Of a stretch of 64,000 nucleotides of DNA, positions 10,230-64,000 are shown piece by piece. Each line of letters opens with the position of its first letter. Position 1 is the first letter of the stretch. This stretch comes from Bugula neritina (Eukaryota > Animalia > Bryozoa): positions 1,364,001-1,428,000 of the forward strand of contig OZ037766.1 of assembly GCA_964035545.1 (NCBI GenBank), read 5' to 3'. The position numbers and the translations under genes were made by a program. The notes below the pieces were generated by a model. It made no database searches. It had not been told where the DNA came from and saw only the letters and a list, made by a program, of their open reading frames with translations.

Positions 10230-13200
10230 ATGAGTTGGGAAAGAAGACAAACCCTCTGGGAATTCCTGTTTTTGTTGATGTTCTGTAAGTATAATATTTC
10301 AATGCATTATACATTGGTTTAATTTACCTGCCGTCTTACACCTGCAGCATTATGCCTTTGACTATATACACTTATACTATTCCTAAGGGTTCCTTGGAGT
10401 ATTATTATTTCATTATTAGAAAACTTGGAATTTACGGAATATGTAACTATAAAGGTACATCAGGCAAACTAATCTCTTGATGTGTTTATTCTCTATGCAG
10501 CTATCAACTTTCACAGCAAACAAATAAACCCTACAGCATAGCAAGTCAATATTTCCATGCTCTTTAACTCGTAGGCTTTGTAACAAAAGCTGCAGCGGGA
10601 TTTTTTAAACTCACAGTATTTTTTATTGAATGGAATGAAGGCCAACAGCTCACCAGTAACAATCTTTGGTGATCAACAAATATAGATGTATATTCCTTAT
10701 ATAAACTTCTGTTTCATGCTTTGCTAGGCATTAACTTTAGTTCTGGAGGCATTGAAATATACACAAACCGCCCTCCGCACTCACTAGATGAGACTAGGTC
10801 CTTCTACTACGGCAGCATAGCCTTAGAGGGAGAAAATGTTACGATAGTATGTACAGTTGGTGAAAATTTTGAACTTTGGAGGACTTTTGAGAACATCACA
10901 CGGAAAGTAGTGCAGACTGGAGATGGCAGGTTAGCTGAGTTTGAACTTTGTGTTTTACTTTCTGTGATCAGTTGGAAGTATGAACTTTTAGTATTCTACT
11001 TAGAAGATATAATATTAGTTGGCTTATAGAAGCTATGATTAATTTCTAATTTGTTTTTATTTATCACCGTTGAAGTAGAATGATGATTTGATATTGCTCA
11101 ATGATTGATAAAAGGTTCAAATTTATTTATACACGCAGCAAATCACAGAATTTTAGTAATTTGTAGGTAAATATAACTTTTAAGCCAAGAAGTTTATATT
11201 CACAACCGTTAGTCAGAAATGACATTAATAATAACAATTATATTGAAAGCACGTAAAGCTTGATTTATTATTTAAATTACAATTTATTTTTGTTGATTCA
11301 GAATCATCCAATCAAGAAGCTCGTCTCATTTGAACACAACTATTACTAATGTGACATTTGGGGACACCGGAAATTACGGATGTGGAAAAAATAACTACTT
11401 TAGACTGAGAGTATATAGAAACCCAGGTATGTCTCAATTGTTTAATAAGTAAGGAAATATTAACTTTCAGTTGTCTTCTCTTTCCATTTCATTCTAGCTA
11501 TATTTATATTGTGTTACTCAGCAGAAGATCAAGAACTACCAACCATAGTAACAGCAGAATGTAAAGCTTATGAGTCAATGGAGAGCATTTCTGATGCCAA
11601 GTATGGAGTCGTCTGTTCTTTCTTCATTTCCACGCTGCCTGCTGACTTTATGACTTGGGATGTTTCACTTTACAAGAGGTGATGTAGAAAAGTTAAACAA
11701 ATTATGAAGCACAACGGTTAACCAATATAATTTAATTAGATTAGTGGAAATCTAGTATTTATTATAACAAATTGTATTTTAAACTCACATAGTTTATGGT
11801 TTCAATCCTCGTGAGAAGCTCTGTTAGTAAAGGTTTCGTTTAAAACAGACTAAGGAATTGCTTTCTACTGTGGCAAAAAGCTAAGCCAGTGCTTTACCCA
11901 CTAGACAATCTTGAAACTTTAATTTATAAAACAGAGTAACTCAAAGGAAAGATAGCTTATTTTAATTAATTACACATTTTCATGTGTAAATTACTCGTAG
12001 TATACAAGTTTATCTGTCAAGTTGTGTTTTTGTTATCCACTGACATAAATATTTATAGTTCTCCTTCTTTAGAGATGGAGTTGTCTGTCTCAGTGGAAAT
12101 TCAGTCAGTAAGTGTAGAGATACTTGTCAGCCATTGAATACCAGAAGGGCAGAGGATGGTACTGACATTGCAGAATGTATAATAAGGACGTCAGACACCT
12201 CCACCCTCAATGCTTCTTACTTAGAGTTTAAAACTTACGCTAAGAATCCCTTTAGCAACTCATCTAACAGAGTCAACTGCTCTGTTACTAATATGAAAGG
12301 TATGTACAATCAGATGGGAGGATAACTCTGAATATATCTAAATAGTTGAGAAAATAACTCCAAATTTGTATTCAAAAGCACACCCATTATGCTATGTAAT
12401 GTATGCCAAGCTCAATAGTACGAAAAAAACCTGTATTCACATGTTTGTTTATTATTATTATTATTTACATTTTTGTTTATTATTGCAAGTACTGCTGTTT
12501 TGTGATTAGGACTTGTGATCCCCAAATATATACAAGCTCAGTTTGAGGTTCATAAAGAATCAGATCCCAGCCGAGCAATGATTTGGATGAGTGGAGAGGT
12601 CAAGTGGGTTGATTATAAACTGTATATGGGATACGCCGCTGCCACAGGCAGCAATATTACTATCAGCTTAGAGGTAGACAACTCTAGGAATATGCCGTGT
12701 AACAGCACAGACCCTGGTGACCCAAGGTGAGTTGTAATATACTGTAATATGTCATATAGTATATATAATATACAGTAATATATCGTTGAGTTTATAGTAA
12801 TATACAGTAATATATCGTGTAGTATACAGTAATATACAGTAATATACAGCAATATATCGTATAGTATATATACTATACAGTAATATATATTATTGTACAC
12901 ATAATATACAATAATATATCGCAGAGTATATCTACTGCACAGTAATATATCATAGAATATATAGTAATATATTGTAGAGTATATAGTAACGTACAACACT
13001 ATATCGTAGAGTAATATACAGTGATGTATTGTACAGTACATATAGTAATATACCGTATATCATCACACTATAAAACTAATAATGCGCAGGAAGAAACTAA
13101 TAACAGATGGGAAGTGGCGAAACATCACTATAGAACATGTGAGCTACGAAGACGCCGGGCCTTACTTATGTAACAACGACAGAAAAGACCTCATTGTAAT

Positions 13201-16200
13201 AGATGCAGGTAATAAGTTATGTGCATCCAGAGTTGTCTTCTTTTGGGTCGGATATGCGCTAAAAAATTGCAATTCAATTGGAATTTATATAGTCCTAGAC
13301 AGTTATCAAGTCCTAATGAGTCAGGTACTGACATAATATAGTTAAAAGTGTCACTTATAGCTAGTAAAATATCTGAATTAAATGAATTATCTTCAATTGG
13401 TTTTGCTAACAGACACCTTGGTGTATTTCATCAGGTAAATCTCCGGCCATCTTGACGCAACGCTGCGAGTCTTTGGAGTTTAGAAATCTAATTTGTATTT
13501 TTCAAACAAACAGCAAGAAAAGGGATATGATGATGTGGAATGCGAAATATGCTTTTAACTCGTAAGTTTTTCCTGACTTTAATTTTTCCAGAGACAAATA
13601 GAAAGCAGTCGTAGCTTAGTAGTTAAAGAGATAGCTTAGTATATACACAGAGGTTGTGGGTTTGAATCTTGGTAGAGCCATTGGCAATTTAAGAAAAAGT
13701 ATTTGATCACAGTTGCTGACTTTCTTCTTAAATTGTATGATTCGATAATGAAAGCAGGAGAAACCAATTCTTTTATATGTCACGGGATTACAGGAACTCG
13801 ACAATATGTACTTATAATAAGGAGTTGTGTTCCCCTGTCAAATGTGAGCGAATGGAAACCTTCCTAGAAGATGGAGTAGAAAATATTAACTGCACTGTAG
13901 TTTCTCACCATCTCGTTCAAAGCAGTGAGATTGACTTTTTCTTCACAGCCTATAATCCATTTATCAACTCCAGTCTCTCAACACAAAGCGTAAAATTAGA
14001 CGCGTCTATAGGTTAGTTTACTATATTTTTATCAACATTTTAATAGAATACTAAAGTTGCTTTGCACTTCTCATACTTGATAGAATTTTTCTGCAACAAT
14101 TATTTTTGTAAATATTTATGTTCCTGTAAATTGAATTTAGTTTTTGCACATGAGCCATCAAGTCCAACTACACTTGCTCAGTTTTAAATTATGTCTGACA
14201 TCATTTTTTAAATTTAGAAATCATTTGTGTAAAGCCATATTGAATTTATACTCTTATAAAATCTTGGAGAAGTTTTTTTAGGGCACAGAGTAGTAAAAGA
14301 TTATATACCTATGAATAACATTTTTGTACAATACTCACTAAAACCATTAATAATTGTATAGAATACAACTTGCAGAAAGACAAGTGTCTTAAAATCGTAA
14401 TTTAAATATAATAGTTATCAATGTTTTAATAAGCCAATCTTGTTTATACATTCAAATAATCAAACTTGTGTGTAATTCTATACAGTTATAATAATTTAGC
14501 AGAACTTTCAGTAGCACTGTTTTCACTCATGTAACCATGGTAGCCACACTAAAATATTCAACGTATTATATTGTATGTTTCAGTGAAGTTTGAGATTAGC
14601 GACGTGAAAGCAGTATCAGTAGTAGACAGGCAGCTTTCTATCTCAGTTCTCATTAATAATGAAGCAGTGTTGGGGCAGCTGTTTAACTTTAGAGTTGTCT
14701 ACACTCATAAGGAGTTACCAGTTGAAAAGGTTCGTTTGATTTCACCATCTAACTTACACCTTCTGTTTTCTTTAGTACCAATTTCATGCTTATACAAGTA
14801 AGTTCATGAAATGTTAAGTTTCATTCGTTCGCAGATTGTGTTCATCTATTCCAATATTTTTTACTAGCAATTCATTACTAAATGTTTTGTTCAAGGTTTT
14901 CAATTTTGTCTGACACAATTTTGCCCTTTTTCTTTCTGATAGCCAGTGACACAACCAGTTTTGACTAGTTTAATGTTTATTTTTATTTTGAATAATTTTC
15001 CTGTAAATTTAGGTGGTTTTTGGTGATTAGTTATTTCATAAGATAGAAGTTTTGTCAAGATCATATCAATACTTTACTAGTATTTTCTTTCAGAACTTTG
15101 AAAACATGACGTTAGACACAGATTTGACCTTGACCGGGTTGAGTTATCACACAGAGTACCAATTGAATATTAGCTGTCAATTGAGCTCCACTAGAAATCC
15201 AAACACTTGGAGTAAAGAATACTATTTCACAATCTATTCCGCTACATCTCGTAAGTCTAAAGACATCAATTTAGTTTACATTGAGCTCTACATACAAAAC
15301 ATTATCATAAAATTATTATACTTTACAAGCCAACTTGTATAGTACAAGAGTAAAAAGGCTGCATATGGTATATTCAGGAGAAAGAACAGTACACTATTGG
15401 TTACGTTGGCTTGTTATATGTAGCACAAACTAGTAGATTAAATAGACACATCTACAAAAGTAATAGTTAGGTGACATAAATGTTTACATGGCATGTTCAT
15501 TGGGTAACCATGGCGATGAGTACAAACAATACTTTGTAATTACCTATAGTAAGGTAGTATTTCAGTTATACTGCATTGACAATACAGTGGCTAGCTAACA
15601 TTACACATTCCACACATTATCTCAAGTTAGTCTGTTAATAAGTACTGAAATGTAACTTTAATAGACCCTGTCAGAGTGCCAAGACACAGTCCCACTGGAT
15701 ATGAACTAAAAGAGTCAAAAGCATGTGGAGACAAGAGCCAACTTGTAACTTTGTTCTGGGAGGTGAGTATAGGGTTCGTTATGTTGGTCTCTAAATCGTT
15801 CCAACAACTTACAGTAAGCTAGAGAATGGCTTATCTAGAATGTTCCAATATAAGCTCATTTTATTCGCAAGTATTCGTTATGATGTATTCTTTGATAATC
15901 TAAAATCAATCCATTTTTCAGGCATGATTTTAAACACTGCCATCAAATGCAAGGCAAAATAATAACTCTACATTTAGTGAACAATGTATAGTTGTCTTTC
16001 AGTTGTTAGCTAGCATTGTTTTGTTGCTGTAGCCTCTTTCTGAGTCCGATGGATATGGTAACGGTGTCATCACGAAATACTCTGTCTATGAGTTAAATAG
16101 TATACCAACAACATTTACTCGACCAATCACATCGCAGGAGAAAGTCTACAATTTCCCCTCCTCATTCATTCTCTCTAGAAAGTCTATTAATGCCAAGGTA

Positions 16201-19200
16201 CTGTTAGACAGACACTTTGGTATTCACTTAACTGTGTATCTGTAGAAGTTGTGAACAGTTTCACCCTAACTAGTGTATCAATACTAGGTGTATACTAGGT
16301 GTGTACTAGGTGTGTACCAGGTGTGTACTAGGTGTGTACTAGGTGTATACAAGGTGTGTACTAGGTGTGTACTAGGTGTGTACTAGGTGTGTACTAGGTG
16401 TATGCTAGGTGTGTACTAGGTGTATGCTAGGTGTGTACTAGGTGTGTACTAGGTGTATACTAGGTGTATACTAGGTGTGTACTAGGTGTATACTAGGTGT
16501 ATACTAGGTGTATACTAGGTGTATACCAGGTGTATGCTAGGTGTGTACTAGGTGTGTACTAGGTGTGTACCAGGTGTGTACTAGGTGTGTACTAGGTGTA
16601 TACAAGGTGTGTACTAGGTGTGTACTAGGTGTGTACTAGGTGTGTGCTAGGTGTGTACTAGGTGTATGCTAGGTGTGTACTAGGTGTGTACTAGGTGTAT
16701 GCTAGGTGTATACCAGGTGTATACTAGGTGTATACTAGGTGTGTACTATGTGTTTGTAGGCATCTTCAAACTCGTCAGCTACAATGTGTGTCAGCAAAAA
16801 GATCAAATATTTAGCCTTAGTACCATTTACTTCTCGTGGAATGGGTACTCAACTAAGTGTTTACCAGTTACCTAGCAACATGATACGTAAGTAGAGATAA
16901 GCCATATGGGGTCTGATGGCGCCTTTCAACTTTTCGTATTTGTTTTTTTATTTTTCTTTGTAATTTAATGTTAAATTTCTGTTTAAACTCTGGCAGCAAA
17001 ATTGTGTTTTTGAAGTAAAAAATGTTTTTCTGAACTTTTGGTTTTCTGCTGCTCAGCAGTTTTATGTTTCTTAATTTATTAGCAATAAATAACGGTTAGC
17101 TTAAAATGTTTTAACATTTATTAAAACAATTTGAAATTCATGTTCACATGCACTGTAAAACTGTATAATAACTTCATTATTTCGTTGGGCAGCATTCCGT
17201 GGCTGTGAGATACAAGTTTCATACGACAGCAAACATATCATAGTCAAGTGGCCAATTCTACCGCGTTCTACCAGATCTACCGTGAAGCACATCTACACAG
17301 TATACTGGTGTAAGCCTGAAGCTAATAGAGATCAGTGTGTGCCTGGGGTGAGTGGAGGATAACTCCAATATATCTTTGTAAAATATTTTATTTATATCGG
17401 TACACACACACACACAACACACACAACACAACACACAATACAGGTTTATAACTGTGACACCAGAGAGATTATACAATATAAAGTGAGAATTCCCTGTACA
17501 TGCTGGACAGATAACTCCTGTAATGTTAATAAGCATAATTTCACTACTATAGAGTCTATTTTGAGTATAATAGTCATGTTTCAGACTATGAACTGGAGAG
17601 AGGCGAATCAGCAAGGTAAACTCAAGATGACATTTGACTCCATGTCAGCGGAATACAGATACGGGCTGAGTGTCAGCGACTCTTACGTGTCCAGTTCTTC
17701 TGGTATTGTCTGGGCTGACTGTATAAGTAACTCCAGCAGCCCCAGTAAGTGTTGTTATTATTATATCTTTACCTGTCTTTACCTGTCTTTCCTCTGTCCT
17801 GTACAGCTAATGGGTATAGTTATTATTATATATTGTATTATTAATATATATATATATTGTCATATTATTATATAATATTATTATTATTATATGCTACTAT
17901 ATTATTGTATTATATTATTATGTTAATATTATGGCATTAATATATATTATAGTATTATAATAGTAATACCATAGTATATCATTAATATATTTGTATTATT
18001 AATTAATAATATTATTTTGTTGCAATGTAGTAATTATGTTGCTCTAACCATGCCTCATGATTCATCATTTAGGTTGTAGTCTGGTCTTGAAGTTGTCTCC
18101 CTTTCTTTACTTATCTTTTCAATAAAAATATATTTTATATTATGTAACCCCAAATTAATTTAGTATTGATGAGATGTGTAAGCCTCATAACATCATTTAT
18201 TTGAAATAATTTATAAATATCAAGATTTTCAGATATTTATTGTTCTATAAATGTTCTGTTGAATATTTTTCCAACGCATATATTTATTCGCTTACTTATA
18301 TTTATGCCAGTAAGTTATACAAACATATGCAGGGCTGAAACCAGCTAGTGTCAACGTGGAGTATACAGCAAGAAAGGCGACAGTGACAATAGAGGACAGG
18401 TGCTCTTCAGACACCAGAAGAGCTGAAAGCTACACCCTTAGTTACTGTAACTACAACAGATCCAGTGAAAAGTGCATTGGTGAAGGTAATCACTCAGCAA
18501 TGCATTATGGGTCTAATAGCTAATTTCACCACAATGTGTATTTTATATCAATTATATATAGTTATTCCCATTTTGTTGTAGTCAATAAAGTCCAGGTTGG
18601 TCGCTGCAGAAGGCCGGTAGATACCGAGGAACTCCGATTCTCTCAAGACTATGGATTCTGGGTAACTTCTCATGCTGGAATAAATCTCAGTAAACCATCC
18701 AGTGTAGTCATCAAACAGAGCCCAGCCAAACGTAAGAACTGGTGATGTGCTCACAGCACAGGATGTCTACGACTTTATTTCTTGTTAGGATGAAATAAAA
18801 TTAAATACTTTTATGTTCAAAATTAGTTGAAATGAAGGACTTCTTCTGCATGTCCGCATATTTCCTGTTTCCTGTTGAGTCATTTTAGTTTTTATGATTG
18901 GAACTGGCTTAGTGATATAGAAATTATAGTGTCTTTTGAGTTGCCTTCAAGGGTAATAAAATAAATAGTAACCTAAAAAGCTTTATATTTTGAAAATAGT
19001 GTAAAGTTATATCGACATATTATTTTAAGCTACCACAATATCATTACATAAAGATGTCATTAGTTATTAAACAAATAGGTCAATATTTTTTATATAAGCA
19101 GGTCATATTTCCTTAGATAAATAGGTCACTGTTTACTATGTAGGTCATTATATAAATAGCATACCAGTATTCATCACCTAGTAAGTTATATTTAGTATTT

Positions 19201-23177: not shown

Positions 23178-23280
23178 GACTACTGTAGCTGTAAAAGTAG
23201 CTACTGTAGCTGTAAAAGAAGCTACTGTAACTGTAAACGGAGCTGCTGTAGCTGTGAAAGTAGACACTGTAGCTGTAACT
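23178..23280. repeat. 21-bp minisatellite (gctactgtagctgtaaaagta), ~5 copies
   Basis: Direct tandem repeats. Confidence 0.8.
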
Positions 23281-30545: not shown

Positions 30546-30632
30546 ACATCATTTGCTGCCGCTACCAACTCTGAGGCAGCAGCCAAGGTAAAGCCAGCCG
30601 GCATCCATCTGCGAGTTTTAGAAATACCGAAG
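30546..30632 (+). other. Candidate 5' UTR exon of receptor B
   Basis: ttttgttattgacag acceptor and aag|gtatgt donor around a GC-richer segment upstream of the ATG exon. Confidence 0.35.
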
Positions 30633-46300: not shown

Positions 46301-46628
46301 AATCGATTACAAGAAAGCGAAAGTAGCAAATCGTTTGCAGAATGAAAGCAAGTCGGACTCTGAGCAGGCCACCCGCCTATTGGTAGATGTTGGAAAGGAA
46401 GCTAATGATGACTCAGCAAATATTTCTGACTACTACACTAAGGACGGTTTTCTACAGCGACCAACTAACAAAGTTGAATTGGAGTACATCAGAGGATCGG
46501 AATGCCTAGACAGTGGTAGTCAGGTCAACAGCGAGGAGAGTGTAAACCTCCCTCAAATTGATGTTAGTGAAAACTCTAGTGGAGACTCAGGCTATGTTGG
46601 CAGAAATCTCTGCTCCAGTTCTATGTAA
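31400..46628 (+). CDS. Type I cytokine receptor-like protein B (LIFR-like layout): SP-CHR-Ig-Ig-CHR-3xFnIII-TM-cytoplasmic tail, ~1376 aa
   Basis: 23 phase-consistent exons: 31400-31463, 31950-32076, 32575-32798, 33278-33462, 33884-34055, 34380-34617, 34878-34996, 35593-35866, 36367-36485, 37659-37782, 38352-38563, 38944-39158, 40145-40310, 40738-40832, 41356-41493, 41915-42050, 42365-42510, 43409-43562, 43856-44008, 44406-44552, 44767-44848 (TM AWAIILGIVLTFTLIIIVILFSIYY), 45495-45660, 45954-46628; total 4131 nt, plus an optional microexon at 36918-36926. SP MELSLWSLAVLLLACGANS; NLQPGTNY...GSYWG; DSGMYSC; DSGKYKC; VKLGPP; DLEPYTTY...DIWS; REVSLYWK; GNGVIHSY; YTVFWC; SSGIIWHNC; TPKLVQP. Confidence 0.87.
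32830..32910 (-). mobile_element. Degenerate copy of the tRNA-derived element
   Basis: CCACTGGAATTCAAACTCGAGACCTCC resembles CCACTGGGATTCGAACCCGAGACTCC of the 33030 copy. Confidence 0.45.
33030..33128 (-). mobile_element. tRNA-derived SINE-like element in an intron of receptor B
   Basis: Reverse strand: ctgtagggttgagtttacccagtggtccctgTGGTATGATGGttagcgc...tcgGGTTCGAATCCcagtgggggg (A and B boxes). Confidence 0.75.
36918..36926 (+). CDS. Candidate 9-nt symmetric (phase 1-1) microexon of receptor B
   Basis: ctttatttcag|CCACTCCTA|gtaagt: strong acceptor and donor, frame-preserving, between the second Ig and the second CHR. Confidence 0.55.
37060..37330. repeat. 30-bp minisatellite (ggttatctatatcttatcttacagctcatt), ~8 copies
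   Basis: Direct tandem repeats; explains ORFs 36946-37167 and 37070-37342. Confidence 0.88.
37541..37616 (-). mobile_element. Degenerate tRNA-derived SINE-like fragment
   Basis: Reverse strand: gggcaggccTGGTAGAGTAATGGataagtgc...GGGTTCAAACCCCaga. Confidence 0.45.
37815..38072. repeat. ~20-bp degenerate minisatellite (ttgacctatataaataccac)
   Basis: Repeated ttgaccta cores downstream of the donor at 37782. Confidence 0.8.
39768..39895. repeat. CpG-rich imperfect inverted repeat (hairpin; probable MITE remnant)
   Basis: ACCGACAGTTGGACCGATTTCGGCAGG is the near reverse complement of CCTGCCGAATATCGGCCCGCTGTCGGT; an internal CCGACAT-gacga-ATGTCGG hairpin is also present. Confidence 0.65.
40845..41045. 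repeat. 10-bp minisatellite (cacactgtca-like)
   Basis: About 20 copies just after the donor at 40832. Confidence 0.88.
41755..41892. repeat. 31-bp minisatellite (agactagtgtgtgatatgctaatagtatcct), ~4 copies
   Basis: Direct tandem repeats ending about 20 bp before the acceptor at 41914. Confidence 0.88.
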
Positions 46629-47628: not shown

Positions 47629-47722
47629 TGTAGTGTTAGGTTTACCCAGTAGCTCCTGTGGTGTAATGGTAGCACACTTGCTGGCAAGCCAGAGGTCTTG
47701 GGTTCGATTCCCAGTGGGGGGC
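47629..47722 (+). mobile_element. tRNA-derived SINE-like element
   Basis: tgtagtgttaggtttacccagtagctcctgTGGTGTAATGGtagcac...ttgGGTTCGATTCCcagtggggggc; same family as the 33030 and 3088 copies. Confidence 0.75.
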
Positions 47723-49619: not shown

Positions 49620-52600
49620 ATGGATACAGCTACCAGGAGAGGAGGTTACATGAACCACCTACTCCTGCTGTCCTTACTTGTCTTTTCTGCCAGTTCCACA
49701 GGTGAAGTAGTGAATAGAGAACTTAAATATTGCTGTGACATTTTATATAAAGCTCACTCATTATGTACACGTCTTAAGCCTAAACATTGTTGTGACTCTA
49801 TAAGTTCACGCACAATATCTGTGTCTTAAGTTTTTGCTAAAAATATTGTTTATATAGGTTTATTCCCAAAGTTCAAAATTGTTACTTTATTTATATCTTT
49901 TGCGTCTATCTAATCTGATATGGTATGTGGGATAAAAAGCTTTCTTTCCACAATATATGCTTATATTTTAGACAGGTAAATTATTAGTAGACTTTCTTTT
50001 TAAAGATACCAGTTTTTAGTATTGGTCAAAATTTATCCTACGGATATAACATACACATATATACCATTTACTGAAATTCACACAAATACTGTACCTGCTG
50101 CTGTAGACACTGGGCTTCAGATTTTAGACCACAGTTGTGTGTCAAGGTTGAAGTCTGGACACTACAACTACAAATGTTTGTTCTACACCAACCTATCTTC
50201 AGAGCTGCACAGGGTGTCTTGGAAGATCTCATTCAAAGTTGAATTGGTGTAAGTGTAAAATATAGGTCAATGTAAGTGTAAAATATAGGTCAGTGTAAGT
50301 GTAACATATATGTCAATGTAAGTGTAAATTATAGGTCAATGTAAGTGTAAAATATAGGTTAGTCTAAATGCAAACTATAAGTTAATGTAAGTATAAACTA
50401 TAAGTTGGTTTAAGTGTAAAATATAGATCAATGTAAGTGCAAACTATATGGTAATGTAAGTGCAGAGTATAGGGTAATGTAAGTTTAAACTATATGGTAA
50501 TGTAAGTGTAAAGTATATGTCAATGTAAGTTTAAACTGTAGGTTCATGTAAGTATAAATGACTAGTATAAATAGAACAGCACCTTGATAATTGGTAAAGT
50601 ATCTTTGCTATGAATTTTCACAACTCTTGAGTAATTATACTGTTGTTCATTTCAATACCTAAAAGAGTAAAAAATAAAAACCTTGTGTTGCCTCAACTCT
50701 TTAAAAACCATCCCCCCCCCCCTTTAACTTATGAGTAGCTACAGTCATAGAAAAGCCACTAAATTTATTGCTAGGACTCAGTTTCAGTAGTATCACTATC
50801 AGTTAAAATGTGAATTTTCACAAACACTGCTAGAGCAAGATGCTTTGCTACAATAGAGTTTTGTTTTATTCATAGAACCCAAAGTCTCAAAAATATGACT
50901 TAGTTCAATGCTGGCAGATTTGTTTATAAAATTTTATAGTAATTGTTATAATATTAACTTTTAATGCATTAAACACAATTATTTTATTAGATATGTTATT
51001 ATATATTATAATTAAAATTATATCACAATAGAAGAGAAAATTATGTTATAATCATAATATACAATACTGGACTATTCTATACAACATTACGTAATCTCTT
51101 AATGTTTTATCGTGAAACTTGTTGATACTATATTATGTAATGTATTAGTACTATATTATGTAATGTATTAGTACTATATTAGGTAATGTATTAGTACTAT
51201 ATTATGTAATGTATTAGTACTATATTATGTAATGTATTAGTACTATATTATGTAATGTATTAGTACTATATTATGTAATGTATTAGTACTATATTATGTA
51301 ATGTATTAGTACTATATTATGTAATGTATTAGTACTATATTATGTAATGTATTAGTACTATATTATGTAATGTATTAGTACTATATTATGTACGTAATGT
51401 GGTAATACTTTATTATATTAAGTCACTGCAAGAGCTGCCTTGAGAAGTCACCAGTGAGAGAGTGTGAGAAGCTTCACGTGCTGCCGTCTGCAAAGGACAA
51501 GAAGTTTGATGTTCTCCAATGTGAGCTGACAACCAATTATCTCTACATGTACGCGTTCTATTATTGGAACGTGACAGCAAGCTATAAGCAGCAGGCAGCG
51601 GACTACCGGCAGCAGACGAATTCTACAAATGTTACAACTTTGAGGTCACCCAGTGTAGGTTGGTATTTTGAAGATGCTACTTGGGACATCCCACGACGTT
51701 TTTCATTTAGTTTCATTTTCGGTTAGTTTCATTAATCATTGCGTCTCAAATGTCACTATTATTCAGCCAGATTCTTGGAGTTGATTAGAATCACTTTAAT
51801 TCAATATACTTCAATTATGGACAGCTGCTTGACCCCAAAAAGTTTGAGTTCTGTGCCAACATCTCTAACAGCTGTAGCAGACGTAAATTTATCAACATTG
51901 TCAAGGAAATAAATTAAAAAGAAACTTAACTAGCAGTTAAACATAAAGGAGCTTAAAAATAACCCATAAATTATTCAAAGAAATTTTGTGTAAAAATGTG
52001 AAATTTCCCTGCATCGGCTTTTTGCAAATAAATTCTGAAATATGGTATTTATTTTTAAAGTAGATACTTTTCCTGTGGTTTTGGGTTCTTTAAAGTTTCA
52101 ACTAAAGTTTGTAATTGTGCCGCATTTCTGACACGTTGCAATGATAGCAGACGGCCCCTTAACATGCTCTGTGCATAAATTAAGATTAGTTGGTGGTTGT
52201 TTGGTTTGGCACGCCTTCGTTTGAGTTGAAAATAAGATTTCTTTTCCACATAATCATGTTGATGTAAATCAAGCCTATGCCAGATTATGAATTGCTAAGA
52301 GAAGAGGGTTCTGCTTTATTTGACATTAATTTGCATAATTGGTTTAGTGATTGATTAACTTGTAATAATTGAATGGAACAAACCGGGGCTACTGCAAGAG
52401 CGATATTGTTAGTATTCTCTACTTTCCATAACTGGCCCACTAAGAACAGATGAGAAAGTGGTGTGACATTGTGTGTAAGTGTTTCTAGACTGAGCAATTG
52501 CACTGGAATGCATTTAATATCACAGCTGCTGTTTGAGGTCTTTTAAAAAAGTTCAACAAACAAATTTTATTTTTAGTTTGTTGGGGATGTTTTTCTCTAT

Positions 52601-55600
52601 GAACTCTGGTATACGCAAGCAGGTCTTTTATCTCAGGGAAGGTCTGTACAGGATATAAAACGGTTTTGAAAGCGGAACATTACAATACCTTACCAACCTG
52701 TACATAGATCAAAGTAGAAAAACTCTGCTTTGTTGTCACCTGCACGATGTTTTAGCAATAGTTTACTATAAAATACGAGATAATTTGAGGTTTAATTACT
52801 TCCACATTTATAATCAACAAATGGTCTTGCTACAGCCTTGATTCATTGCCAACATTTTGAGCTATGTTTCATTTAATTTATTTTTATATAACTACGAGTA
52901 GCTAAAAATTTCTTGTTGGCTATTAATAAATTTGATGATTAAAGCAGTCATGTAAGTAGAATAAAATATATTGCATAAAAAAAATAGCGTGTCACTGGGG
53001 GTGGATGAGCCCCTATTCACAACATTAGCAGACCAACCTGATTCAAATGTCTAAGGCTTTTAGGTCAAGGTTAACTTGTGTAGTGTAGACTAAGCTCTTA
53101 GTAAGCTCACTGTTTAGTCCCTCTCTTTCTAAGCTTAGCTCAGTAGTGTCAAAGAGATATCCAGGCTGGTTATGTAAGAGTGACGTACAATATTTACTTC
53201 ATGAACTGCATTCTATTCTACATCAAGACAATAATTACTACAGCTCCACTCTCAGCCTCTTTAACTACCCTTTATTTAGTGGTACTGGAACAGCCTGAAG
53301 TCCTCAATACTAGCGTGACGGTGGACAGTCTATCCCTGCAAGTACAGCTGAGCCAGTATGAGGTCTACAGCGAAGGTGAAGGTCACGAGGGCTACGTAGA
53401 GTATGACGCCATGGAGAACGGAGTCAGATACAGGGTGTCTACTTATGCCACCCACGGACTAGCTCAGCCGGTGAGTGAAGAGTAGCTAGTTTATACAATC
53501 GTAGGATTATTTTATCCTATTAAAAGATCTGTTGCATGTCATCCTATACTGCAACAATAAATGCTGTGCTCATCTATAGATTTTTCTCACTCAGTACACT
53601 GATATATATTTACGTTTAGATTTATTTATATCTCTCTCATAAATGGTAAGATCATTCTGTTTAAACTCTGTTATATGACATTCTTTGACTCAGGCAGCTT
53701 ATATATGTTATATTAGTCTAAAGGCTTTACTGCTCAGTATTAAAATATATTATGATCACATAAAATAGAATTAATGAAGATTTCAAAAGTGATTTATAAA
53801 AGTGCGTTTTGAAACATGCAAAAGGATTAAACAGTTAAACTAAACTACGCCAGAAATTGTTGGGTAGCAGAAAGTCATTATAATATAAAAGGCATGTCTG
53901 TTACTAGTTCTAACACTAAAGTTATGTACCAATACTTTACAGGAAGTGAGAATATATACTAACAAAGGACCAAGGGACTGGATATACATCTCAGACCTGG
54001 AACCCTTCACCACATACGATATCAGCGTCACTAATCAGTTGAACAACACCGTGAATACAGACATCTGGAGCCAGTCTACCAACCTAACTCTGTCTACTAA
54101 AGGTATGGTTGCTATCAATACATTCCTTGCACAAGTTACAGTGCCGTACTCAGTTGTACTTCGCAATGAATCAACTATCCTTTGTAGATTTGGCAAGTTT
54201 TATACTGAGTTGATATTTTATGTTGCATAACAGTTGTTTTGACTGATTTAATGATACATATTATATTATGTTTTATTTATAATGTAGTATAGTACATATA
54301 CATTGCATATATAATATAACGCAGTTCTATACTGTTTCAGCTCCACCATCCCTTCCCTCCTTCTCCATTCAGAGAGACACCAAATGTCAATATGGAAGAC
54401 AGGCTCAACTCTACTGGAAGGTAAAACTCTAAAACTGCTATCAACTTGATTGAACTTCACTCAAGCAGTCTGCAGGTGTACTATATTCACCTGCAACTTG
54501 TAACTTAGAAATACTGTTCACAAATTTATAATATAATATGTTGAAACTATCTCCCCTCACGATAACATACATTTTAGTATTGAGGAATATGTCTTGCATC
54601 CTACTAAGCTTTCTTGTCATGTGTAGCTAGTTGATAGGCTATGTAAAGGCTGCCACACTGCATGCAACACTGCAGGGCAATCTTTGACTTTTCAGACTTT
54701 GTGCTCTCGACTTTTGTTATCATTCATTCAGAGACAAAACTAGATTACTGAATGAGTGGACAACCCTTTACTCACACCTTGTACTTTTTATCTGCCACTA
54801 AATTAAAATTTAGGTAATATCAGTGTAATTGTTGCAAAAATATTGTTTTCTGAAGCTAAATTTAGATCAAAAGGCTGATAAAACCAAAAGTAGTTGCACC
54901 CTTCAGTGCACTGAGCTAAACTCAAACAGGTGTACTTATTGATAGCCAACTGGTGACTATTTTTAGTCATCAAAACAACTCAGTAATGACTTTTAGATGA
55001 GAAAACTGGACTGTGGTCACTAGACAGCAAAACATCTGTCTGATGAAGAGACTTTATATAATCACATATCAAGTAGTATTTTCTTTTTCACAGCACCTGG
55101 GAGAAGTAAACACAACATCAGTAGAGTTCTACCAAGTACACATAGGGAATGGGACGGCTCAGCAGTCGACCCCTAACAAGGTTAGTCTTAGAGTATTATC
55201 TTAGTCTATACAGTTCAATGCAGATTATTATAGTAAACAAGGCTACTCTTGCACAGTGTGGTGATAAGCTAAGATGGAGTCTGCTCAAATCATAACTATC
55301 AGCAAGTTTCTTGGAGAATTGAATGTGAATTCTCACTATCTTTATCCAAAAATTGTTGGTGTAAATAAAACTGTAAACTGCAGCAATTGTTTAAGAATTA
55401 ATTAGGCATTCCAGGTATAACAGCAATATAATATAATATAAATAGAACATATAGGCCTAATACAATATATTATAATGTGCAACTTCGTGATTCCAACAGC
55501 TACCTGAAGGATCTAGAAGTGTGGAGTTGTGCATCTCTAACTCTTCTGAAGAACTTACAGTGATGCCATTCAAGATGGACAACGCAACACTTCCTGTTTA

Positions 55601-58600
55601 CAAGTACTACATTCCTTCTGCAGAAAACGGTATAGCAGTAGCTTTTCTAGTAGACACTAAGAATACTGAGTAACTGTTAGTTTCTACTAGTTGCTATGAA
55701 TCACGAGCAATTCATAGTGATTCATATCATATACGAGTCATATGTACTATAACTAGTAGTACCTACAGTTTAAACTCTCTATGACGCACATAGACACTAT
55801 GGTTTATACTGTCTATGACTCACATATACACTATGGTTCATACCGTCTATGAGTCATATAGACACTACAGTTCATACTGTCTATGAGTCATAAATAGTAT
55901 GGTTTATGGTGTCTTTCAGTCATAGTACAATGGTGCACAATCTTTTGTTGATAAACTTTGAGTGTTTTACATTAAATCAAGTGCAGTAAAGTTATTCTAT
56001 TTCTCTAAACAAGTTTTAATGTTAAATAATATTAGCATATTATTGCAGCTTTTCACATAGCAAAGTCTAATATTCTTACCTATAATCAGAATTCCAAGTT
56101 ATTGGTTAGGGAGGCTTAGAAGCTTAAGGTATTCTCAGATTGGGGAATACATGCTTCGCCTAAGGCTATGATATCCTTGTCTGCCCCTTTTAACTTTTAG
56201 CGTTGTGAGTTGACTGCCAACTGACCGTCTGTCATGCTTTGAGGTGGCGAAATTAATTATTAATTAATATTATTTATTTATCAAACAGAAAAAAGTCCAC
56301 TATCTGGTTATATAATGCATAGTTATATTATATTTTAGAAAGTTTGTCAGAAATAAATGAAGTGTAACAGCTACTTTTGAAATACTTGCTAACTAATATG
56401 AATTTAGTATTCTTGGTCCACATTAATATACTTTGCATTAATTTTTGAAACAGCTCAACACTCAAAGGAATTCCTGCTTTAACTAAGCAAGGTCAAGATA
56501 ACTAGGTCAGTTGATGAATAGATATATAGGTCACGTGATGTCGGCACAATGTCATCAGTCTCTGCATTGTTTCAGTGTTAGAGTTGAGAGAATGTGACAT
56601 CTTGGTGGAGTACTTGAAGTCTTCAGATGAAATATCAGTCAGTTGGTCTCTACACACCAGAAGTTACAACTACACAGTGTTCTGGTGTAACACTGACTTT
56701 GGAGATCAGTGTGTGAAGCAGGTAGGTGTCTAGCCTCAGTTTTATAGCCTTAGTTTTAGGTTTATACTGTGAAATTATTTTTTCTACATCTTGTTTAAAT
56801 TAATGGCTCTTTGGTAGCCCAAAGTGAAGATTTCCAATTACTATATGTTATTATTTTGATCAGATTTTATGAAAATAATGTGTGCACCTGTTTCTATAGC
56901 AACAGGTCGAGTGTACATGTTTTTCTGTGCCCATGGTGTAATCTTCATGTTTATCTGTTTCCATGGTAACAGGTAGAATGGCGGTCAGTTGAATCAGCAG
57001 ACAACAAAGTGAAGTTTCAATCCGGTGGTAACTTTCTGAGATACAAGTTTGGAGTGAGTCTGAATGATGAGATGATGAGGTCTTCTGGGATTGTTTGGCA
57101 TAACTGTATAAATTACTTAGATAGAGGTGAGACGGTCTGTACAAGTAGAAATGTATGAATCACTTGGATAGCGGTGAAACGGTCTGTACAAGTAGAAATG
57201 TATGAATCACTTGGATAGCGGTGAGACGGTCTGTATAAGCAGAAATAAATTCAATGTAACATATCATGATCAGCATTAAATATTTTCTTTGCTATAAAAC
57301 GTGAAACACTGATGTATGCTTCATATTTGTTTAGTAACCAGCTGAACATTAGATTTTGGTGAAAGACCTAAAATATTCTGTTCGCCAGGCCATCTTCAGC
57401 TAAGCTAGATCAATACGTTGCGTTGCGTACAATCACCATGGGAATGCTGTAGTCAGTGTCATTAGGGTAATAGCATATGCCCAAGTATATGTAGAAGGGT
57501 ACTTGAGATGCAAATAAATACTTTGTGGTTTAGTAATTATTACTTTTAACAGCACTGCGTTTTATGCTTTTATATCATTATACTATACCACTTGTATATT
57601 ATTTAGAATGAGTAATATAATTTCGAGTGACATGTGCATTATACTCATTACCATACACATCAATTTGTGTATTATGCCATACTATATATCATATTATACT
57701 ATACTGTACTCATACTATAATTCATGTATTCTATTTCAGAATTAGTTACACCGATGATACACGTGTCTCTGTTTGACCTTGAGGCCACCGTCACCATAAA
57801 GGATAGCTGTGTGAAGAACACAAGGAGGGCTGAGTATTACTCAGTCTTATCCTGTATTTATGATGTCAAGAAGGAGCTCTGCATATCAGAAGGTATAGCC
57901 TTAGAGGTTCATATTTAGATATATATGATGTAGGAGGACACAACTATGATAATTTGACTGTGGGCAAAGAGCAAAAGCTATTTAGTTCTCTATGCATGCA
58001 CATCAAGCAAAACATCAAAATGTTTTTTTTAAATTAGACAACTTTCTCACCTCATAACATCTTTTGAAATTAAAGTATGAATGTTACAAAAGCTTTTATC
58101 ACATTAGTTAGTAGCTGAACAAAGTCTTTTCCTAAAGGTACATCTAGTTTTGCAAATTTTAATCAAGAAAACAAAATCACATTTATAAAGTGTCATTGAA
58201 AGTTTTAAAATCAAATACACGATGTATGACCATTAATCCTGATGTATACTAAAAGTACATACAACAAAAGTATGAAATACAGGGTTTGAGATGCGACCAC
58301 ATTAAACTCTATAAATTTATGTTTTCTTTATGACTTAGACATTCTAAGTTTGTTATGCCTTAAGACAAAGTAGGCTATTTTTAGTAACGTAAGAAGTTAT
58401 TTTTAGTAACACAAGAAGTTATTCTTAGTAACACAAGAAGTTATTTTTAGTAACACAGTTAGCTTATAGATACTTTTAGTAAAAGTTTAGTCAATCTCCT
58501 TTTAGAACATAAGGCTGTCCTCCAACCCTGTCACATGCAGACTACCATTCAACTGACACGATACGCTCAAAACTATGCATTCTGGGTAGTCTCACATGCA

Positions 58601-61017
58601 GGCAACATGGCTGCTAAGTCCAAGGTTATCATAGAGAACATAAACGGTAAAGGTTAGCAAGTTATTTTACATGTATTTTTAAGATTTTTCAACTCTGTTA
58701 TATGTATATTTGCTTTTCAAAATTAGTACACAAGGCAAACTATGTTTAACAGGTCACTTAATATTTTATGACAACTTAAACAACAAAAATACAGCGAGCT
58801 TTTAGCTATCATTCAGCTTTATAAGGGTGATCCCTGTTTATACAGCTGCTTTATTCTCACTCAGCACTGTTATGGGTATTTGGTTCTCTACTAAAGTTTT
58901 ATCAATGCAAAATTTCATACATTTCTGTTGCATTTCTTCAAGACATTTTCAATTTCCTGTGGAGCTTCTTGCTACCAGAGCAACTCATATTTCAGTTGAT
59001 GTGTGTTCGGGGTGCGGTATACTCGCGCTTGTGCAGCGTAAAAACTTGTAGTCTGAATGTGTACTTAATGCAGGTAGTTATAGTCTGGTTCTGTATCTAA
59101 TGCAGGTAGAAGTTGGTTGGGTCTCCTGTTTATTATACCTGCAGCAGTGACAATGGTACTAATTATCCTCTACATTGCTAAATGCTTACGGTAAGTGCTT
59201 ATGTTGCAATACACCTATTTTATAGTAAATATAACTTACCTCTATTTTTACCACTTCTCTAAAACAAGTCACCAGTGAGGTTGAAAATTTAAACAGCTTT
59301 AATTTGGCCTAGAGAAAAATAATTACAACCAGTTTAATTTAAAAATATGTTTAATTTCTAATACGTTGAAGGTTTTGTGTTTTAAATTTTTAGACAATGG
59401 TAACTGTTAATGGTTGAATTTTAGATGTTAGGCTCATTAAATGATAAGTTAAAAAATTTCTAAGAATATAGCTTTAGAAGCAAAATAAACAAGTAGCAAG
59501 TTATAGTAAATTACGGCTTGACTCAAAGTGCACACAACTCCGTTTGATATTTGCTTGCTGCAAATGTGATGTTAGAGTAACCATCTAAAATACAATTTTT
59601 TTATGGTTCTCAGAAGTATTTACTTCTTATTCTTATTGTATAACTTATTGATTATGTGTGTGTGTTGCATGTGCGTGTGTGTGTGCGTGCGCGTGCGCGT
59701 GCGCGTGCATGTGCGTGTGTGCGTGCTAATCATTTTATAGTTTCTTGGAAGAAGCATGAGAGGACAACATGAATTGAAAATTGCGGCTATAACTAAAACA
59801 GTTTTCATCTTCACATTTGATATGTGCTTTTAGTCAGCGCCAAATAGTGAAAAGATTGACGACTCCCATGCTTGTTCAGCCTACAGATCTTCTGATGGAA
59901 AAGATGGACATGAGTGAAGACAACTCTAAATTTCATGAATATGATGAATTTGACCCTCTGAATGGAGAGGTAATAGCTGTGATGTCACAAAATTTAATAC
60001 TTTTCGTTATTAAAGAAAAATTTCAATTGATGAACCAACACTATATTATTCAGCGACTGTTTATGGTTACAGTGTAGATGTTGCCAAGCAAGAGTAATAT
60101 GACTTAAGAGAATTTAAAAAAAATCATGTTTATTAAATCATCAAAACCAGTTGTAGAAAGTTTCAAAATTCATAAATTTTCACATAAAATTTGCTTAATG
60201 GAAACTTTGTCGCTTCACTTGCTTAGAATGGCTTGACATTTTATTGCTGTATATAAAACTAAAACTAAAACTGAATGAATTATACAAATTTTTAACTATT
60301 TTTTTCAATGATTGTTTTATCAATTTTATTAATTTTAGTCAGTGTATATAATATTTTGATAACTATTCCAATGATAAAATGTGTCTTTTTGCAAAAAGTA
60401 TTTAGATTTGTTAAAATTTTGGCTTTCTTTATTTAAAAAAAACTGTATACATTGCGCAAAGTTTAATTTTTTTGTAGATTGTATTTACCGAAATCTCTCT
60501 GAAAAGAGATGAATCCAAACATAACTTAGAAGATACTGGAAGTCAGTGCAATGACCTTGACTGCTATGCACCTGCAGCATCTTCGGAGTCGTATTTGCCG
60601 TTGTATTCTGACAAAGTCAAGGTCAAATTGGCAGATGGTAACGACTGCAATTACAGTATGAGCTCTATCAACAGCTACTTTAAATGTGTTGCAGTTGAAA
60701 GCACGGACGTCTCATGTGAGGAGTTGAATTACTTGCCAAATGTAGCTTTAGATCAACACTTAAGCTTAGAAAATATAGCCACAGGTGTTTCTTCCACCCC
60801 TACGGGTGCAATCATTGACTTAGATAAATTTCTATATTATGGAAGAGACAACTCAAAAGAAATAATTGACACGTGTCTAAATAATGAATGTCAGGAAATT
60901 TTGGAAAGCGGTAAGGGTGTAGAGAGCACGTTCTCAGTAAACAACAGTAGTGATTGTAGAGACTCTGGTTATCTGGATGTTCAACACAGTGTGACATCTG
61001 TACTCACTATTACATGA
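49620..61017 (+). CDS. Type I cytokine receptor-like protein C (Domeless-like, no Ig): SP-CHR-3xFnIII-TM-cytoplasmic tail, ~820 aa
   Basis: 15 phase-consistent exons: 49620-49701, 50107-50248, 51423-51658 (AAG acceptor), 53280-53470, 53943-54102, 54341-54420, 55094-55180, 55500-55629, 56576-56721, 56973-57126, 57740-57892, 58506-58646, 59106-59190 (TM WLGLLFIIPAAVTMVLIILYIA), 59834-59969, 60478-61017; total 2463 nt. SP MDTATRRGGYMNHLLLLSLLVFSASST; DLEPFTTY...DIWS; AQLYWK; YTVFWC; SSGIVWHNC; TPMLVQP; tail ends DSGYLDVQHSVTSVLTIT. Confidence 0.85.
50249..50560. repeat. 23-bp minisatellite beginning with the donor GTAAGT, ~13 copies
   Basis: gtaagtgtaaaatataggtcaat units start at the first base of the intron. 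Confidence 0.9.
51126..51395. repeat. 23-bp minisatellite (tactatattatgtaatgtattag), ~11 copies
   Basis: Near-perfect tandem repeats ending about 25 bp before the acceptor at 51422. Confidence 0.93.
55775..55925. repeat. ~33-bp degenerate minisatellite
   Basis: Units of the form ctatgactcacatatacactatggttcatactgt. Confidence 0.75.
57105..57245. repeat. 47-bp tandem repeat duplicating an exon end and splice donor (3 copies)
   Basis: aatcacttggatagcgGTGAgacggtctgtacaagtagaaatgtatg; a related 2-copy version lies at 43545-43630. Confidence 0.85.
58375..58458. repeat. 22-bp minisatellite (gttatttttagtaacacaagaa)
   Basis: About 4 tandem copies. Confidence 0.8.
59655..59725. repeat. (TG)n/(GC)n alternating purine-pyrimidine microsatellite
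   Basis: tgtgtgtg...gcgtgcgcgtgcgcgt. Confidence 0.85.
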
Positions 61018-63883: not shown

Positions 63884-64000
63884 CTGATAGAAGTACACAT
63901 GGAACATTCCAGAAGGAAATCTACTTTAAATAGAGTGACTGGTAGCTGGTTACTGTGTAGACAATAGTGACAGTTATCAGTCTAGACTTTCTAGACATAC

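What the first reader, a model, noticed from the sequence alone, without database searches (positions are those of the whole stretch)
10230..61017. Tandem cluster of three intact, architecturally different Domeless/gp130-like cytokine receptors
Seen: three head-to-tail multi-exon genes splice into uninterrupted frames, each with SP, CHR, 3 FnIII, a single TM, a proline Box1-like motif and a Tyr-bearing acidic tail. Known: WK/WE-x-NG-x-I-x-x-Y, YxxxWC and SSGxxWxxC FnIII motifs typify gp130/Domeless JAK-STAT receptors, and well-studied invertebrates have one or very few of these (Drosophila has dome plus the truncated et/latran). Inference: this is a lineage-specific cytokine-receptor expansion that could act as a multi-ligand or heterodimeric JAK/STAT system, paralleling the vertebrate gp130/LIFR/IL12R family. 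This is the best candidate for an undescribed system here.
Basis: partly seen in the sequence, partly recalled or inferred. Interest (0 to 1): 0.9.

Follow-up and report, generated by a model that had tools for sequence, protein, structure and literature searches.

The report
Bryozoan trio of gp130-like cytokine receptors
A moss animal (Bugula neritina group) carries three neighbouring, intact genes for gp130/Domeless-type signalling receptors, with two more copies elsewhere, whose ligand-binding parts were duplicated and reshuffled much as in vertebrate LIF, leptin and IL-12 receptors, although well-studied invertebrates have only one or two such genes.

Summary
Observation confirmed. Three + strand genes splice (all GT-AG, no stops) into 1133, 1376 and 822 aa receptors with identical core intron phases. 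Architectures: g1 SP-Ig-D1-Ig-CHR-3Fn-TM-tail; g2 SP-CHR-Ig-Ig-CHR-3Fn-TM-tail; g3 SP-CHR-3Fn-TM-tail. The genome belongs to the Bugula neritina group. Each module best matches the equivalent Domeless module. The stalk of a paralogue folds closest to gp130 D4-D6. Exons are under purifying selection against another B. neritina lineage (pN/pS about 0.25). Two unlinked paralogues (one full-length, one lacking CHR and Box1), a JAK and two STAT loci are in the genome. g2 and g3 exchange four exons by gene conversion, while their N-terminal ligand-binding exons and tails have diverged. Caveats: CxW is CxF and WSxWS is degenerate. No RNA run exists, the CHR fold was not modelled, and ligands and heterodimers are inferred only. 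No paper on bryozoan cytokine receptors was found; molluscs and annelids were not surveyed. The scan had already noted the truncated paralogue and unchecked helical-cytokine candidates on other DNA of this genome, and the conversion pattern on this same stretch. Verdict: new variant of a known kind.

The parts
10230..21842 (+). Gene g1, 21 exons, 1133 aa: SP - Ig - lone D1 (Cys half of a CHR) - Ig - CHR - 3 FnIII - TM - Box1 exon - tail (8 Tyr, no YxxQ)
   Evidence: Exons 10230-10284, 10728-10929, 11302-11426, 11522-11678, 12073-12299, 12510-12726, 13090-13208, 13435-13561, 13794-14011, 14584-14729, 15094-15250, 15665-15762, 16033-16197, 16760-16886, 17193-17347, 17585-17744, 18333-18485, 18582-18731, 19228-19315, 19748-19880, 21420-21842
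10728..13208 (+). g1 extra N-terminal modules Ig-D1-Ig, each a two-exon unit with phases 1-2-1
   Evidence: blastp to g2 Ig/D1 modules; hhalign to Dome Ig and D1; trees group them with the cluster's other Ig and D1 modules
13435..15250 (+). g1 CHR (D1: C-x9-C-x-F; D2 ends with NTWS in place of WSxWS), phases 1-2-1-0-1
19228..19880 (+). g1 TM exon and Box1-like exon (P-x-V-I-x-P followed by an acidic run)
30546..30632 (+). Probable 5' non-coding exon of g2; acceptor and donor conserved in another B. neritina lineage
   Evidence: alignment to L043; role inferred
31400..46628 (+). Gene g2, 23 exons, 1376 aa: SP - CHR - Ig - Ig - CHR - 3 FnIII - TM - Box1 exon - tail (15 Tyr, one YxxQ at residue 1264)
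   Evidence: Exons 31400-31463, 31950-32076, 32575-32798, 33278-33462, 33884-34055, 34380-34617, 34878-34996, 35593-35866, 36367-36485, 37659-37782, 38352-38563, 38944-39158, 40145-40310, 40738-40832, 41356-41493, 41915-42050, 42365-42510, 43409-43562, 43856-44008, 44406-44552, 44767-44848, 45495-45660, 45954-46628
31950..34055 (+). g2 first (distal) CHR
   Evidence: EpoR_lig-bind weak hit E=0.011 and fn3 E=0.004 on its exons; blastp to g3 CHR E=6e-21; Dome D1 HMM 12.5 bits
34380..36485 (+). g2 two Ig-like domains
   Evidence: V-set E=0.0027 and ig E=0.062 on exons; hhalign to Dome Ig 75%
37659..40310 (+). g2 second (proximal) CHR
40105..44011 (+). g2 gene-conversion patches 40105-40303, 42303-42545, 43330-43634, 43864-44011 (D2 second exon, both Fn2 exons, first Fn3 exon, with 40-80 bp of flanking intron at three of the four patches)
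   Evidence: 88-98% DNA identity to g3 patches 53903-54101, 56514-56756, 56901-57200, 57748-57895; other exons saturated at synonymous sites; both flanks seen in run contigs; paralogues closer than orthologues in Fn2b, 5 vs 11 differences
44767..46628 (+). g2 TM, Box1-like exon (P-x-L-V-x-P) and tail; tail motifs YLRC, KIDLxRFL and ENSSGDSGYVGRN conserved in homologues from other species
49620..61017 (+). Gene g3, 15 exons, 822 aa: SP - CHR - 3 FnIII - TM - Box1 exon - tail (10 Tyr, no YxxQ); no Ig; first stalk domain shortened, lacking NG-x-I-x-x-Y
   Evidence: Exons 49620-49701, 50107-50248, 51423-51658, 53280-53470, 53943-54102, 54341-54420, 55094-55180, 55500-55629, 56576-56721, 56973-57126, 57740-57892, 58506-58652, 59106-59190, 59834-59969, 60478-61017
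53903..57895 (+). g3 counterparts of the gene-conversion patches

Best explanation
The three genes are intact paralogues of the gp130/Domeless ('tall', group 2) class I cytokine receptor, made by tandem duplication. Symmetric phase 1-1 Ig and CHR exon modules were duplicated inside the cluster lineage, independently of vertebrate LIFR/OSMR/LepR. Shown: architecture, homology, selection, conversion, and JAK plus two STAT loci in the genome. Inferred from gp130/Dome biology: a secreted ligand, most likely a helical cytokine, binds the CHR elbow and Ig domains and dimerises the chains; the three-FnIII stalks bring the TM helices together; JAK bound at the Box1 exon phosphorylates tail tyrosines, which recruit STAT and SHP2/SOCS-type SH2 proteins. 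Divergent ligand-binding exons and tails on a shared stalk imply different ligand specificities and signalling outputs. Whether chains pair as homo- or heterodimers is untested.
For: The only full-length non-bryozoan, non-repeat hit of the Fn2 exon profile among 1.84e9 proteins is a millipede protein with Ig, IL6Ra-bind and fn3 domains, whose PDB hits are IL12RB2, OSMR and gp130. A Dome Fn2 HMM scores all five bryozoan genes 45-57 bits, against at most 9 for usherin/phosphatase FnIII repeats and at most 4.4 for shuffles. Profile-profile diagonal: Ig 75%, D1 72%, D2 92%, Fn1 95%, Fn2 99%, Fn3 45%. An AlphaFold model of the g4 orthologue's stalk (pLDDT 70) ranks gp130 D4-D6 first in Foldseek (E 9e-13, TM 0.40 vs about 0.25 for most other FnIII chains) and in VIA-align (Z 12.3). 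All five D1 and all four Ig modules of the cluster group together (95 and 98 SH-aLRT). pN/pS 0.25. Box1-like motif and tail tyrosine motifs conserved in other species. JAK FERM F2 followed by kinase exons on C1; two STAT loci.
Against: D1 similarity is weak alone (6-12 bits vs shuffle maximum 8); the D1a and Fn2a exon profiles found no cytokine receptor in PDB, and the D2b profile ranked fibronectin first. CxW and WSxWS are not canonical; Box1 lacks the middle proline of gp130 (recalled consensus); g1 and g3 have no YxxQ. No RNA evidence. The folded protein is g4's orthologue, aligned with Dome rows, not g1-g3, with rmsd 12-13 A across the three domains; VIA-align's next unrelated row is within 1 Z unit.
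Confidence: 0.8

Rival explanations
1. Vertebrate-style combinatorial system: g2 and g3 (possibly also g1 or g5) form heterodimers around a shared chain and read several helical cytokines; gene conversion keeps the chain-chain contact surfaces (D2 stem, Fn2/Fn3 stalk) matched while the ligand faces diverge.
For: Conversion is limited to D2b, Fn2a, Fn2b and Fn3a (88-94% aa, pS 0-0.18) while D1, D2a, Fn1 and tail are saturated; it continued after the split from another B. neritina lineage; g2 has the only YxxQ and a tail conserved across species; unchecked scan notes list several helical-cytokine candidates in this genome.
Against: Conversion can be neutral: only exons kept similar by purifying selection remain convertible. 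Contact surfaces were not mapped on a model of g2 or g3. No co-expression or binding data.
Confidence: 0.35
2. Only one or two chains signal (g2 and the more canonical g5); g1, g3 and the tail-less g4 are modulators or decoys that dampen JAK/STAT by forming inactive heteromers, like Drosophila Latran/Eye transformer.
For: g4 lacks CHR and Box1 prolines; g1 and g3 lack YxxQ; the g3 tail evolves faster (pN/pS about 0.5); Lat is a tandem Dome paralogue that works this way (PMC2914635).
Against: g1 and g3 keep the Box1-like exon, long tails and the DSGY and YFK tyrosine motifs; the g1 tail is under strong purifying selection (pN/pS about 0.14).
Confidence: 0.2
3. The ectodomains have been co-opted for something other than cytokine binding (pathogen or symbiont recognition, lectin-type ligands, allorecognition) while still using JAK/STAT, or the genes are unrelated Ig/FnIII adhesion receptors.
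For: Non-canonical CHR motifs, 14-25 N-glycosylation sequons, module shuffling and conversion resemble immune receptor families; shrimp Domeless is activated by a C-type lectin (PMC5645147, title).
Against: The Dome-specific Fn2 signature and colinear module order exclude generic adhesion receptors; there are few copies and no sign of positive selection in the exons tested, which were the last stalk exon, TM, Box1 and tail exons, not the CHR.
Confidence: 0.12
4. g2 (or g1) is mis-joined: its first exons make a secreted SP-CHR protein (CRLF1/EBI3-like) and the rest is a separate gene, so the double-CHR architecture is a modelling artefact.
For: Read-through of the g2 exon 5 donor reaches a stop at about 34106 next to an AATAAA; no RNA data.
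Against: No signal-peptide exon was seen before exon 6; the intron is 324 bp with matching phase 1; AATAAA is common at 32% GC. A soluble isoform could coexist with the full-length form.
Confidence: 0.08

Closest known systems
Arthropod Domeless (for example millipede GAB6023091.1; Drosophila Dome)
   Same: Ig/CHR then FnIII stalk with NG-x-I/F-x-Y, YTxFWC and SSGxVWxxC motifs, single TM, juxtamembrane proline motif, tyrosine-bearing tail; closest sequence relatives found.
   Different: The millipede protein has five FnIII after the CHR, the bryozoan genes three; its D1 has CxW; flies have one signalling gene plus Lat; none of the arthropod proteins fetched showed a duplicated CHR or tandem Ig.
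Vertebrate gp130 (IL6ST) and group 2 receptors: LIFR, OSMR, LepR, IL12RB1/2, IL27RA, IL31RA
   Same: CHR + 3 FnIII + TM + Box1; the family stalk folds closest to gp130 D4-D6; duplicated CHR (g2, like LIFR/LepR), partial CHR duplication (g1, loosely like OSMR), Ig-less form (g3, like IL12RB1; recalled); a same-chromosome triplet is also proposed for the vertebrate stem (PMC12284397).
   Different: Not orthologues of the individual vertebrate genes by inference: the duplicated modules group within the bryozoan cluster against Dome (no vertebrate rows in the trees). CHR-Ig-Ig-CHR and Ig-D1-Ig-CHR orders are not known to me from vertebrates. WSxWS, CxW and YxxQ are mostly degenerate.
Drosophila dome + latran/eye transformer pair
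   Same: Tandem, same-strand paralogues; a truncated non-signalling relative exists here too (g4).
   Different: All three window genes keep stalk, Box1 exon and long tails; g4 is unlinked and lost the CHR, whereas Lat kept the cytokine-binding module and lost the FnIII stalk (PMC2914635).
Molluscan 'IL6R'/gp130-like receptors (PMC13203501)
   Same: Lophotrochozoan SP-Ig-CHR-FN3-TM receptor alongside JAK and STAT.
   Different: That survey does not mention Bryozoa, and the passages read describe no paralogue clusters, duplicated CHRs or gene conversion; those sequences were not retrieved for direct comparison.

Membership tests
Class I cytokine receptors | CHR of two FnIII folds; first with C-x(9-10)-C-x-W-x(26-32)-C-x(10-15)-C (PMC1963337) | tested here: inconclusive
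   Cys pairs conserved in all five D1 modules; C-x9-C in g1 D1b and both g2 D1s, longer in g3 and g1 D1a; W replaced by F. Profile match to Dome D1 72%, E 3e-5, and to no other Dome module. Paralogue g5 has canonical C-x9-C-x-W.
Class I cytokine receptors | WSxWS motif at the end of D2 | tested here: not met
   Strict motif absent; the position holds NTWS (g1), SYWG and DIWS (g2), DIWS (g3) with an invariant Trp. Known members vary here (GHR, PMC1963337), so this lowers strict membership only.
Class I cytokine receptors | CHR three-dimensional fold | not testable with these tools
   Each domain is split over two exons, the joined model could not be submitted, and no full-length database protein of g1-g3 was found.
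Cytokine receptor superfamily | Intron phases 1-2-1-0-1 across the receptor module | tested here: met
   All four complete CHRs. The pattern is cited for class II receptors in PMC8863823; its validity for class I is recalled, not checked.
gp130/Domeless group (group 2) | FnIII stalk between CHR and TM, homologous to gp130 D4-D6 / Dome Fn1-3 | tested here: met
   Dome Fn2 HMM 45-52 bits for g1-g3; hhalign 95/99/45%; fold of a paralogue's stalk ranks gp130 D4-D6 first.
gp130/Domeless group (group 2) | Ig domain ahead of the CHR | tested here: met
   Two each in g1 and g2; absent from g3.
Class I cytokine receptors | Signal peptide and single TM helix | tested here: met
   Hydropathy only; no dedicated predictor available.
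JAK-coupled receptors | Box1 proline motif next to the membrane | tested here: inconclusive
   P-x-[VL]-[IV]-x-P, 12 residues into the exon after the TM exon in all three genes and also present in another species; differs from the gp130 consensus; binding untested.
JAK-coupled receptors | STAT docking tyrosine (YxxQ for STAT3 and Dome) | tested here: inconclusive
   One YxxQ in g2, none in g1 or g3; Yxx[VLI], YFK/YLR and DSGY motifs present.
JAK-coupled receptors | JAK and STAT genes in the same genome | tested here: met
   FERM_F2 over cut-off with downstream tyrosine-kinase exons on C1; STAT_bind at two loci.
JAK-coupled receptors | Ligand-induced JAK/STAT activation | not testable with these tools
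   Needs a bench assay.

The most novel reading that the evidence does not exclude
Bryozoans independently built a vertebrate-like combinatorial class I cytokine system: several receptor chains with reshuffled CHR and Ig modules, a decoy chain, two STATs and a set of so far unrecognised helical cytokines, with gene conversion keeping the dimer interface of two chains compatible.
Probability: 0.3. Interest if true: 0.85.

Novelty: new variant of a known kind. Interest (0 to 1): 0.58.

Why it matters
The literature read here treats protostomes and invertebrate chordates as having one or two class I cytokine receptors and ties receptor expansion to vertebrates (PMC1963337, PMC3296744, PMC12284397). 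At least five paralogues in a bryozoan, with independently duplicated CHRs, would show that the LIFR/LepR-type design arose more than once without genome duplication or adaptive immunity. It also supplies defined baits for finding lophotrochozoan JAK/STAT ligands; PMC13203501 reports no IL-6-like ligand in most invertebrates.

Tried and rejected
RNA support: no RNA run listed; the one run is DNA. Pfam on single exons gave only sub-threshold hits; IL6Ra-bind rang nowhere in the genome, uninformative. D1a and Fn2a exon profiles against PDB found no receptor; the A7 profile found only phosphatase FnIII repeats. ESM Atlas on a D1 exon: blank. Top-scoring hits P0001, P0003 and P0005 are repeat artefacts. 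No annotated full-length g1-g3 or g5 protein was found. Assembly artefact for the near-identical patches: rejected, since run contigs link the patches to both flank sets and depth roughly doubles there. Pseudogenes: rejected for the exons tested. A fourth copy or relic between the genes: none. L009 and L014 were chance hits. Following the operators' note, spliced models were never sent to a search or fold tool; searches used single exons, alignments of one homologous exon (once on a natural protein as scaffold, A7) or natural proteins; joined models were used only inside scripts.
Full report
Source. The window is C2:1364001-1428000 of a 216 Mb, 321-contig genome. A paralogue on C4 has an orthologue annotated as KAF6030587.1 of Bugula neritina, 85% identical in protein and mostly 84-90% in surrounding DNA, with Skp1 upstream in both. 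The genome therefore belongs to the B. neritina species group (cheilostome bryozoan), but not to the lineage of the published assembly. The cluster lies between an NDST heparan sulfotransferase gene and a PP2C phosphatase.

Observation. I rebuilt the genes by hand from the sequence. All three splice with GT-AG introns into open frames: g1 1133 aa, g2 1376 aa, g3 822 aa. The 14 introns from the proximal CHR to the last exon have identical phases in all three genes. Exons are richer in GC than introns (0.44 vs 0.32). Contigs of another B. neritina lineage, found through the terminal exons, keep the frames of seven exons with pooled pN/pS 0.25 and keep g1 next to g2 (L043). No RNA run exists for this sequence, so the junctions rest on phase conservation, paralogy and selection, and N-terminal exons on paralogy alone, apart from g2 exon 1, whose start codon and donor are conserved.

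Anatomy. The shared core is CHR (D1, D2), three FnIII domains, a TM exon, a Box1-like exon and one large tail exon. g3 has only this. g2 adds a second full CHR and two Ig domains in front. g1 adds Ig, a lone D1 and Ig. Every added module is a two-exon unit bounded by phase 1 introns, so it can be duplicated without breaking frame. The five D1 modules form one group (SH-aLRT 95) and the four Ig modules another (98) against Dome and g5, so the shuffling happened inside this cluster's lineage; the order of events is unresolved.

Identity. A profile of the second Fn2 exon searched against 1.84 billion proteins returned, besides repeat artefacts and B. neritina-like or unidentified fragments, one full-length protein: a millipede Ig-IL6Ra-bind-FnIII receptor. 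Its relatives are annotated cytokine receptor or domeless and its PDB hits are IL12RB2, OSMR and gp130. With arthropod-type Dome proteins alone as the profile, the Fn2 module scores 45-57 bits on the five bryozoan genes, at most 9 on usherin and phosphatase FnIII repeats and at most 4.4 on shuffles. Profile-profile comparison is diagonal: each bryozoan module matches the Dome module of the same position best. The D1 match is the weakest link (72%, E 3e-5). The stalk of the natural g4 orthologue, folded with Dome rows as alignment (pLDDT 70), ranks gp130 D4-D6 first in both structure searches, with large rmsd over the three domains and a small margin in VIA-align. The CHR of g1-g3 could not be folded. 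Against the published definition (PMC1963337), CxW is CxF and WSxWS is degenerate, so I file these as divergent members of the gp130/Dome group whose two short CHR signatures are not met.

Rest of the family. Two more paralogues lie on C4. g4 (about 10.850-10.856 Mb) is SP, a Ser-rich linker, three FnIII, TM and a short tail with no CHR and no Box1 prolines; its last Fn3 and TM exons are duplicated in tandem. g5 (about 15.913-15.933 Mb) has a probable Ig domain, a canonical C-x9-C-x-W D1, probably a second D1-like unit, D2, three FnIII, TM, a Box1-like exon and a tail; its model is incomplete. In a stalk tree the five genes form one group, ((g1,(g2,g3)),(g4,g5)), against arthropod Dome (100/99, long branches). 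No other lophotrochozoan was in the tree, so the age of the expansion is open. Five is a lower bound. g2-type tails and a g5-type gene occur in contigs of other, unidentified species, so the split is probably older than this species. One JAK and two STAT loci are present.

Gene conversion. g2 and g3 are 88-94% identical in protein over four exons (D2b, Fn2a, Fn2b, Fn3a), with pS 0-0.18 and identity running into flanking introns, whereas their other ten core exons are 17-50% identical with pS 0.72-0.97. Contigs from a public DNA run join these patches to both sets of flanks, with about doubled depth, so this is not a mis-assembly. In Fn2b the two paralogues differ at 5 sites while the g2 orthologue of the other lineage differs at 11; in unconverted Fn3b the pattern reverses, 18 vs 4. 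Conversion has therefore continued since the lineages split. A first-stage note on the same stretch saw the patchwork too; I had measured it beforehand.

How it probably works. Shown: the parts above. Inferred from gp130 and Dome: a ligand binds CHR and Ig domains and dimerises chains; the stalk positions the TM helices; JAK on the Box1 exon phosphorylates tail tyrosines; STAT and SHP2/SOCS-type proteins dock. The Box1-like motif P-x-[VL]-[IV]-x-P and the g2 tail motifs YLRC and ENSSGDSGYVGRN are conserved in other species amid about 30% identity, which marks them as functional. I put JAK/STAT-coupled receptors with different specificities at 0.8. Heterodimers with conversion-matched interfaces (0.35) and decoy roles for some chains (0.2) are refinements of this reading and are not exclusive of it. 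Unchecked scan notes list several candidate helical cytokines in this genome; I did not test them.

Comparison and novelty. Reports read here give one or two class I receptors for fly, sea squirt and amphioxus (PMC1963337, PMC2914635, PMC12284397) and trace an IL6R-like gene to molluscs without mentioning Bryozoa (PMC13203501). Eight literature searches found nothing on bryozoan cytokine receptors; the library lacks most subscription journals. The receptor class and tandem duplication of Dome are known. The copy number, the CHR-Ig-Ig-CHR and Ig-D1-Ig-CHR designs that parallel LIFR, LepR and OSMR, and exon-level concerted evolution appear undescribed. I recall that mollusc annotations often list several gp130-like models, which I could not check and which would lower the novelty. 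Verdict: real, a new variant of a known kind, interest 0.58.

Method note.

Noticed in passing
G000:C4 about 10.850-10.856 Mb (L021 8425-9999, L022 1-4640): Fourth paralogue g4: SP, Ser-rich linker, 3 FnIII, TM, short tail without Box1 prolines, no CHR; last Fn3 and TM exons tandemly duplicated; orthologue KAF6030587.1; Skp1 upstream.
   Followed up: partly
G000:C4 about 15.913-15.933 Mb (L032-L034): Fifth paralogue g5, most Dome-like (canonical CxW D1, SSLWS), apparently with a second D1-like unit; model incomplete.
   Followed up: partly
G000:C1 about 14.533-14.548 Mb, minus strand (L041, L048, L049): JAK gene: FERM F2 exon followed by tyrosine kinase exons.
   Followed up: partly
G000:C4:3714168-3714910 and C5:11198359-11198481: Two STAT loci.
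   Followed up: no
window 1 to about 4000, + strand: 3' part of an NDST heparan sulfate N-deacetylase/N-sulfotransferase gene (first exon E 1e-11 to 1NST); its end was not mapped.
   Followed up: partly
window 63699-63920, minus strand: Exon of a PP2C phosphatase gene converging on the cluster.
   Followed up: partly
window 34056-34110: Read-through of the g2 exon 5 donor gives a stop after about 17 codons beside an AATAAA: a possible soluble SP-CHR isoform.
   Followed up: no
window 30546-30632: Exon-like segment with conserved splice sites upstream of g2, probably 5' UTR.
   Followed up: partly
window 20454-21406 and 16282-16753: Intronic minisatellites in g1 (30-bp unit x 32, 11-bp unit x 43); the 30-bp array is shared with the other B. 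neritina lineage.
   Followed up: no
window 33035-33128 (+) and 47629-47721 (-): Two 80% identical short elements in opposite orientation that look tRNA-derived (possible SINE).
   Followed up: no
window 25750-26050: About 300 bp present here and absent from the other lineage's contig L043, possibly a recent insertion.
   Followed up: no
window 43320-43415 and 57105-57246: Short local tandem duplications of acceptor-side and exon-end sequence flank the converted Fn2b exon in g2 and g3.
   Followed up: no
tails of g1, g2, g3 (residues 1049, 1363, 805): Each tail has a DSGY motif, loosely like the beta-TrCP degrons recalled from GHR, PRLR and IFNAR1 but lacking the second serine at the canonical spacing.
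   Followed up: no
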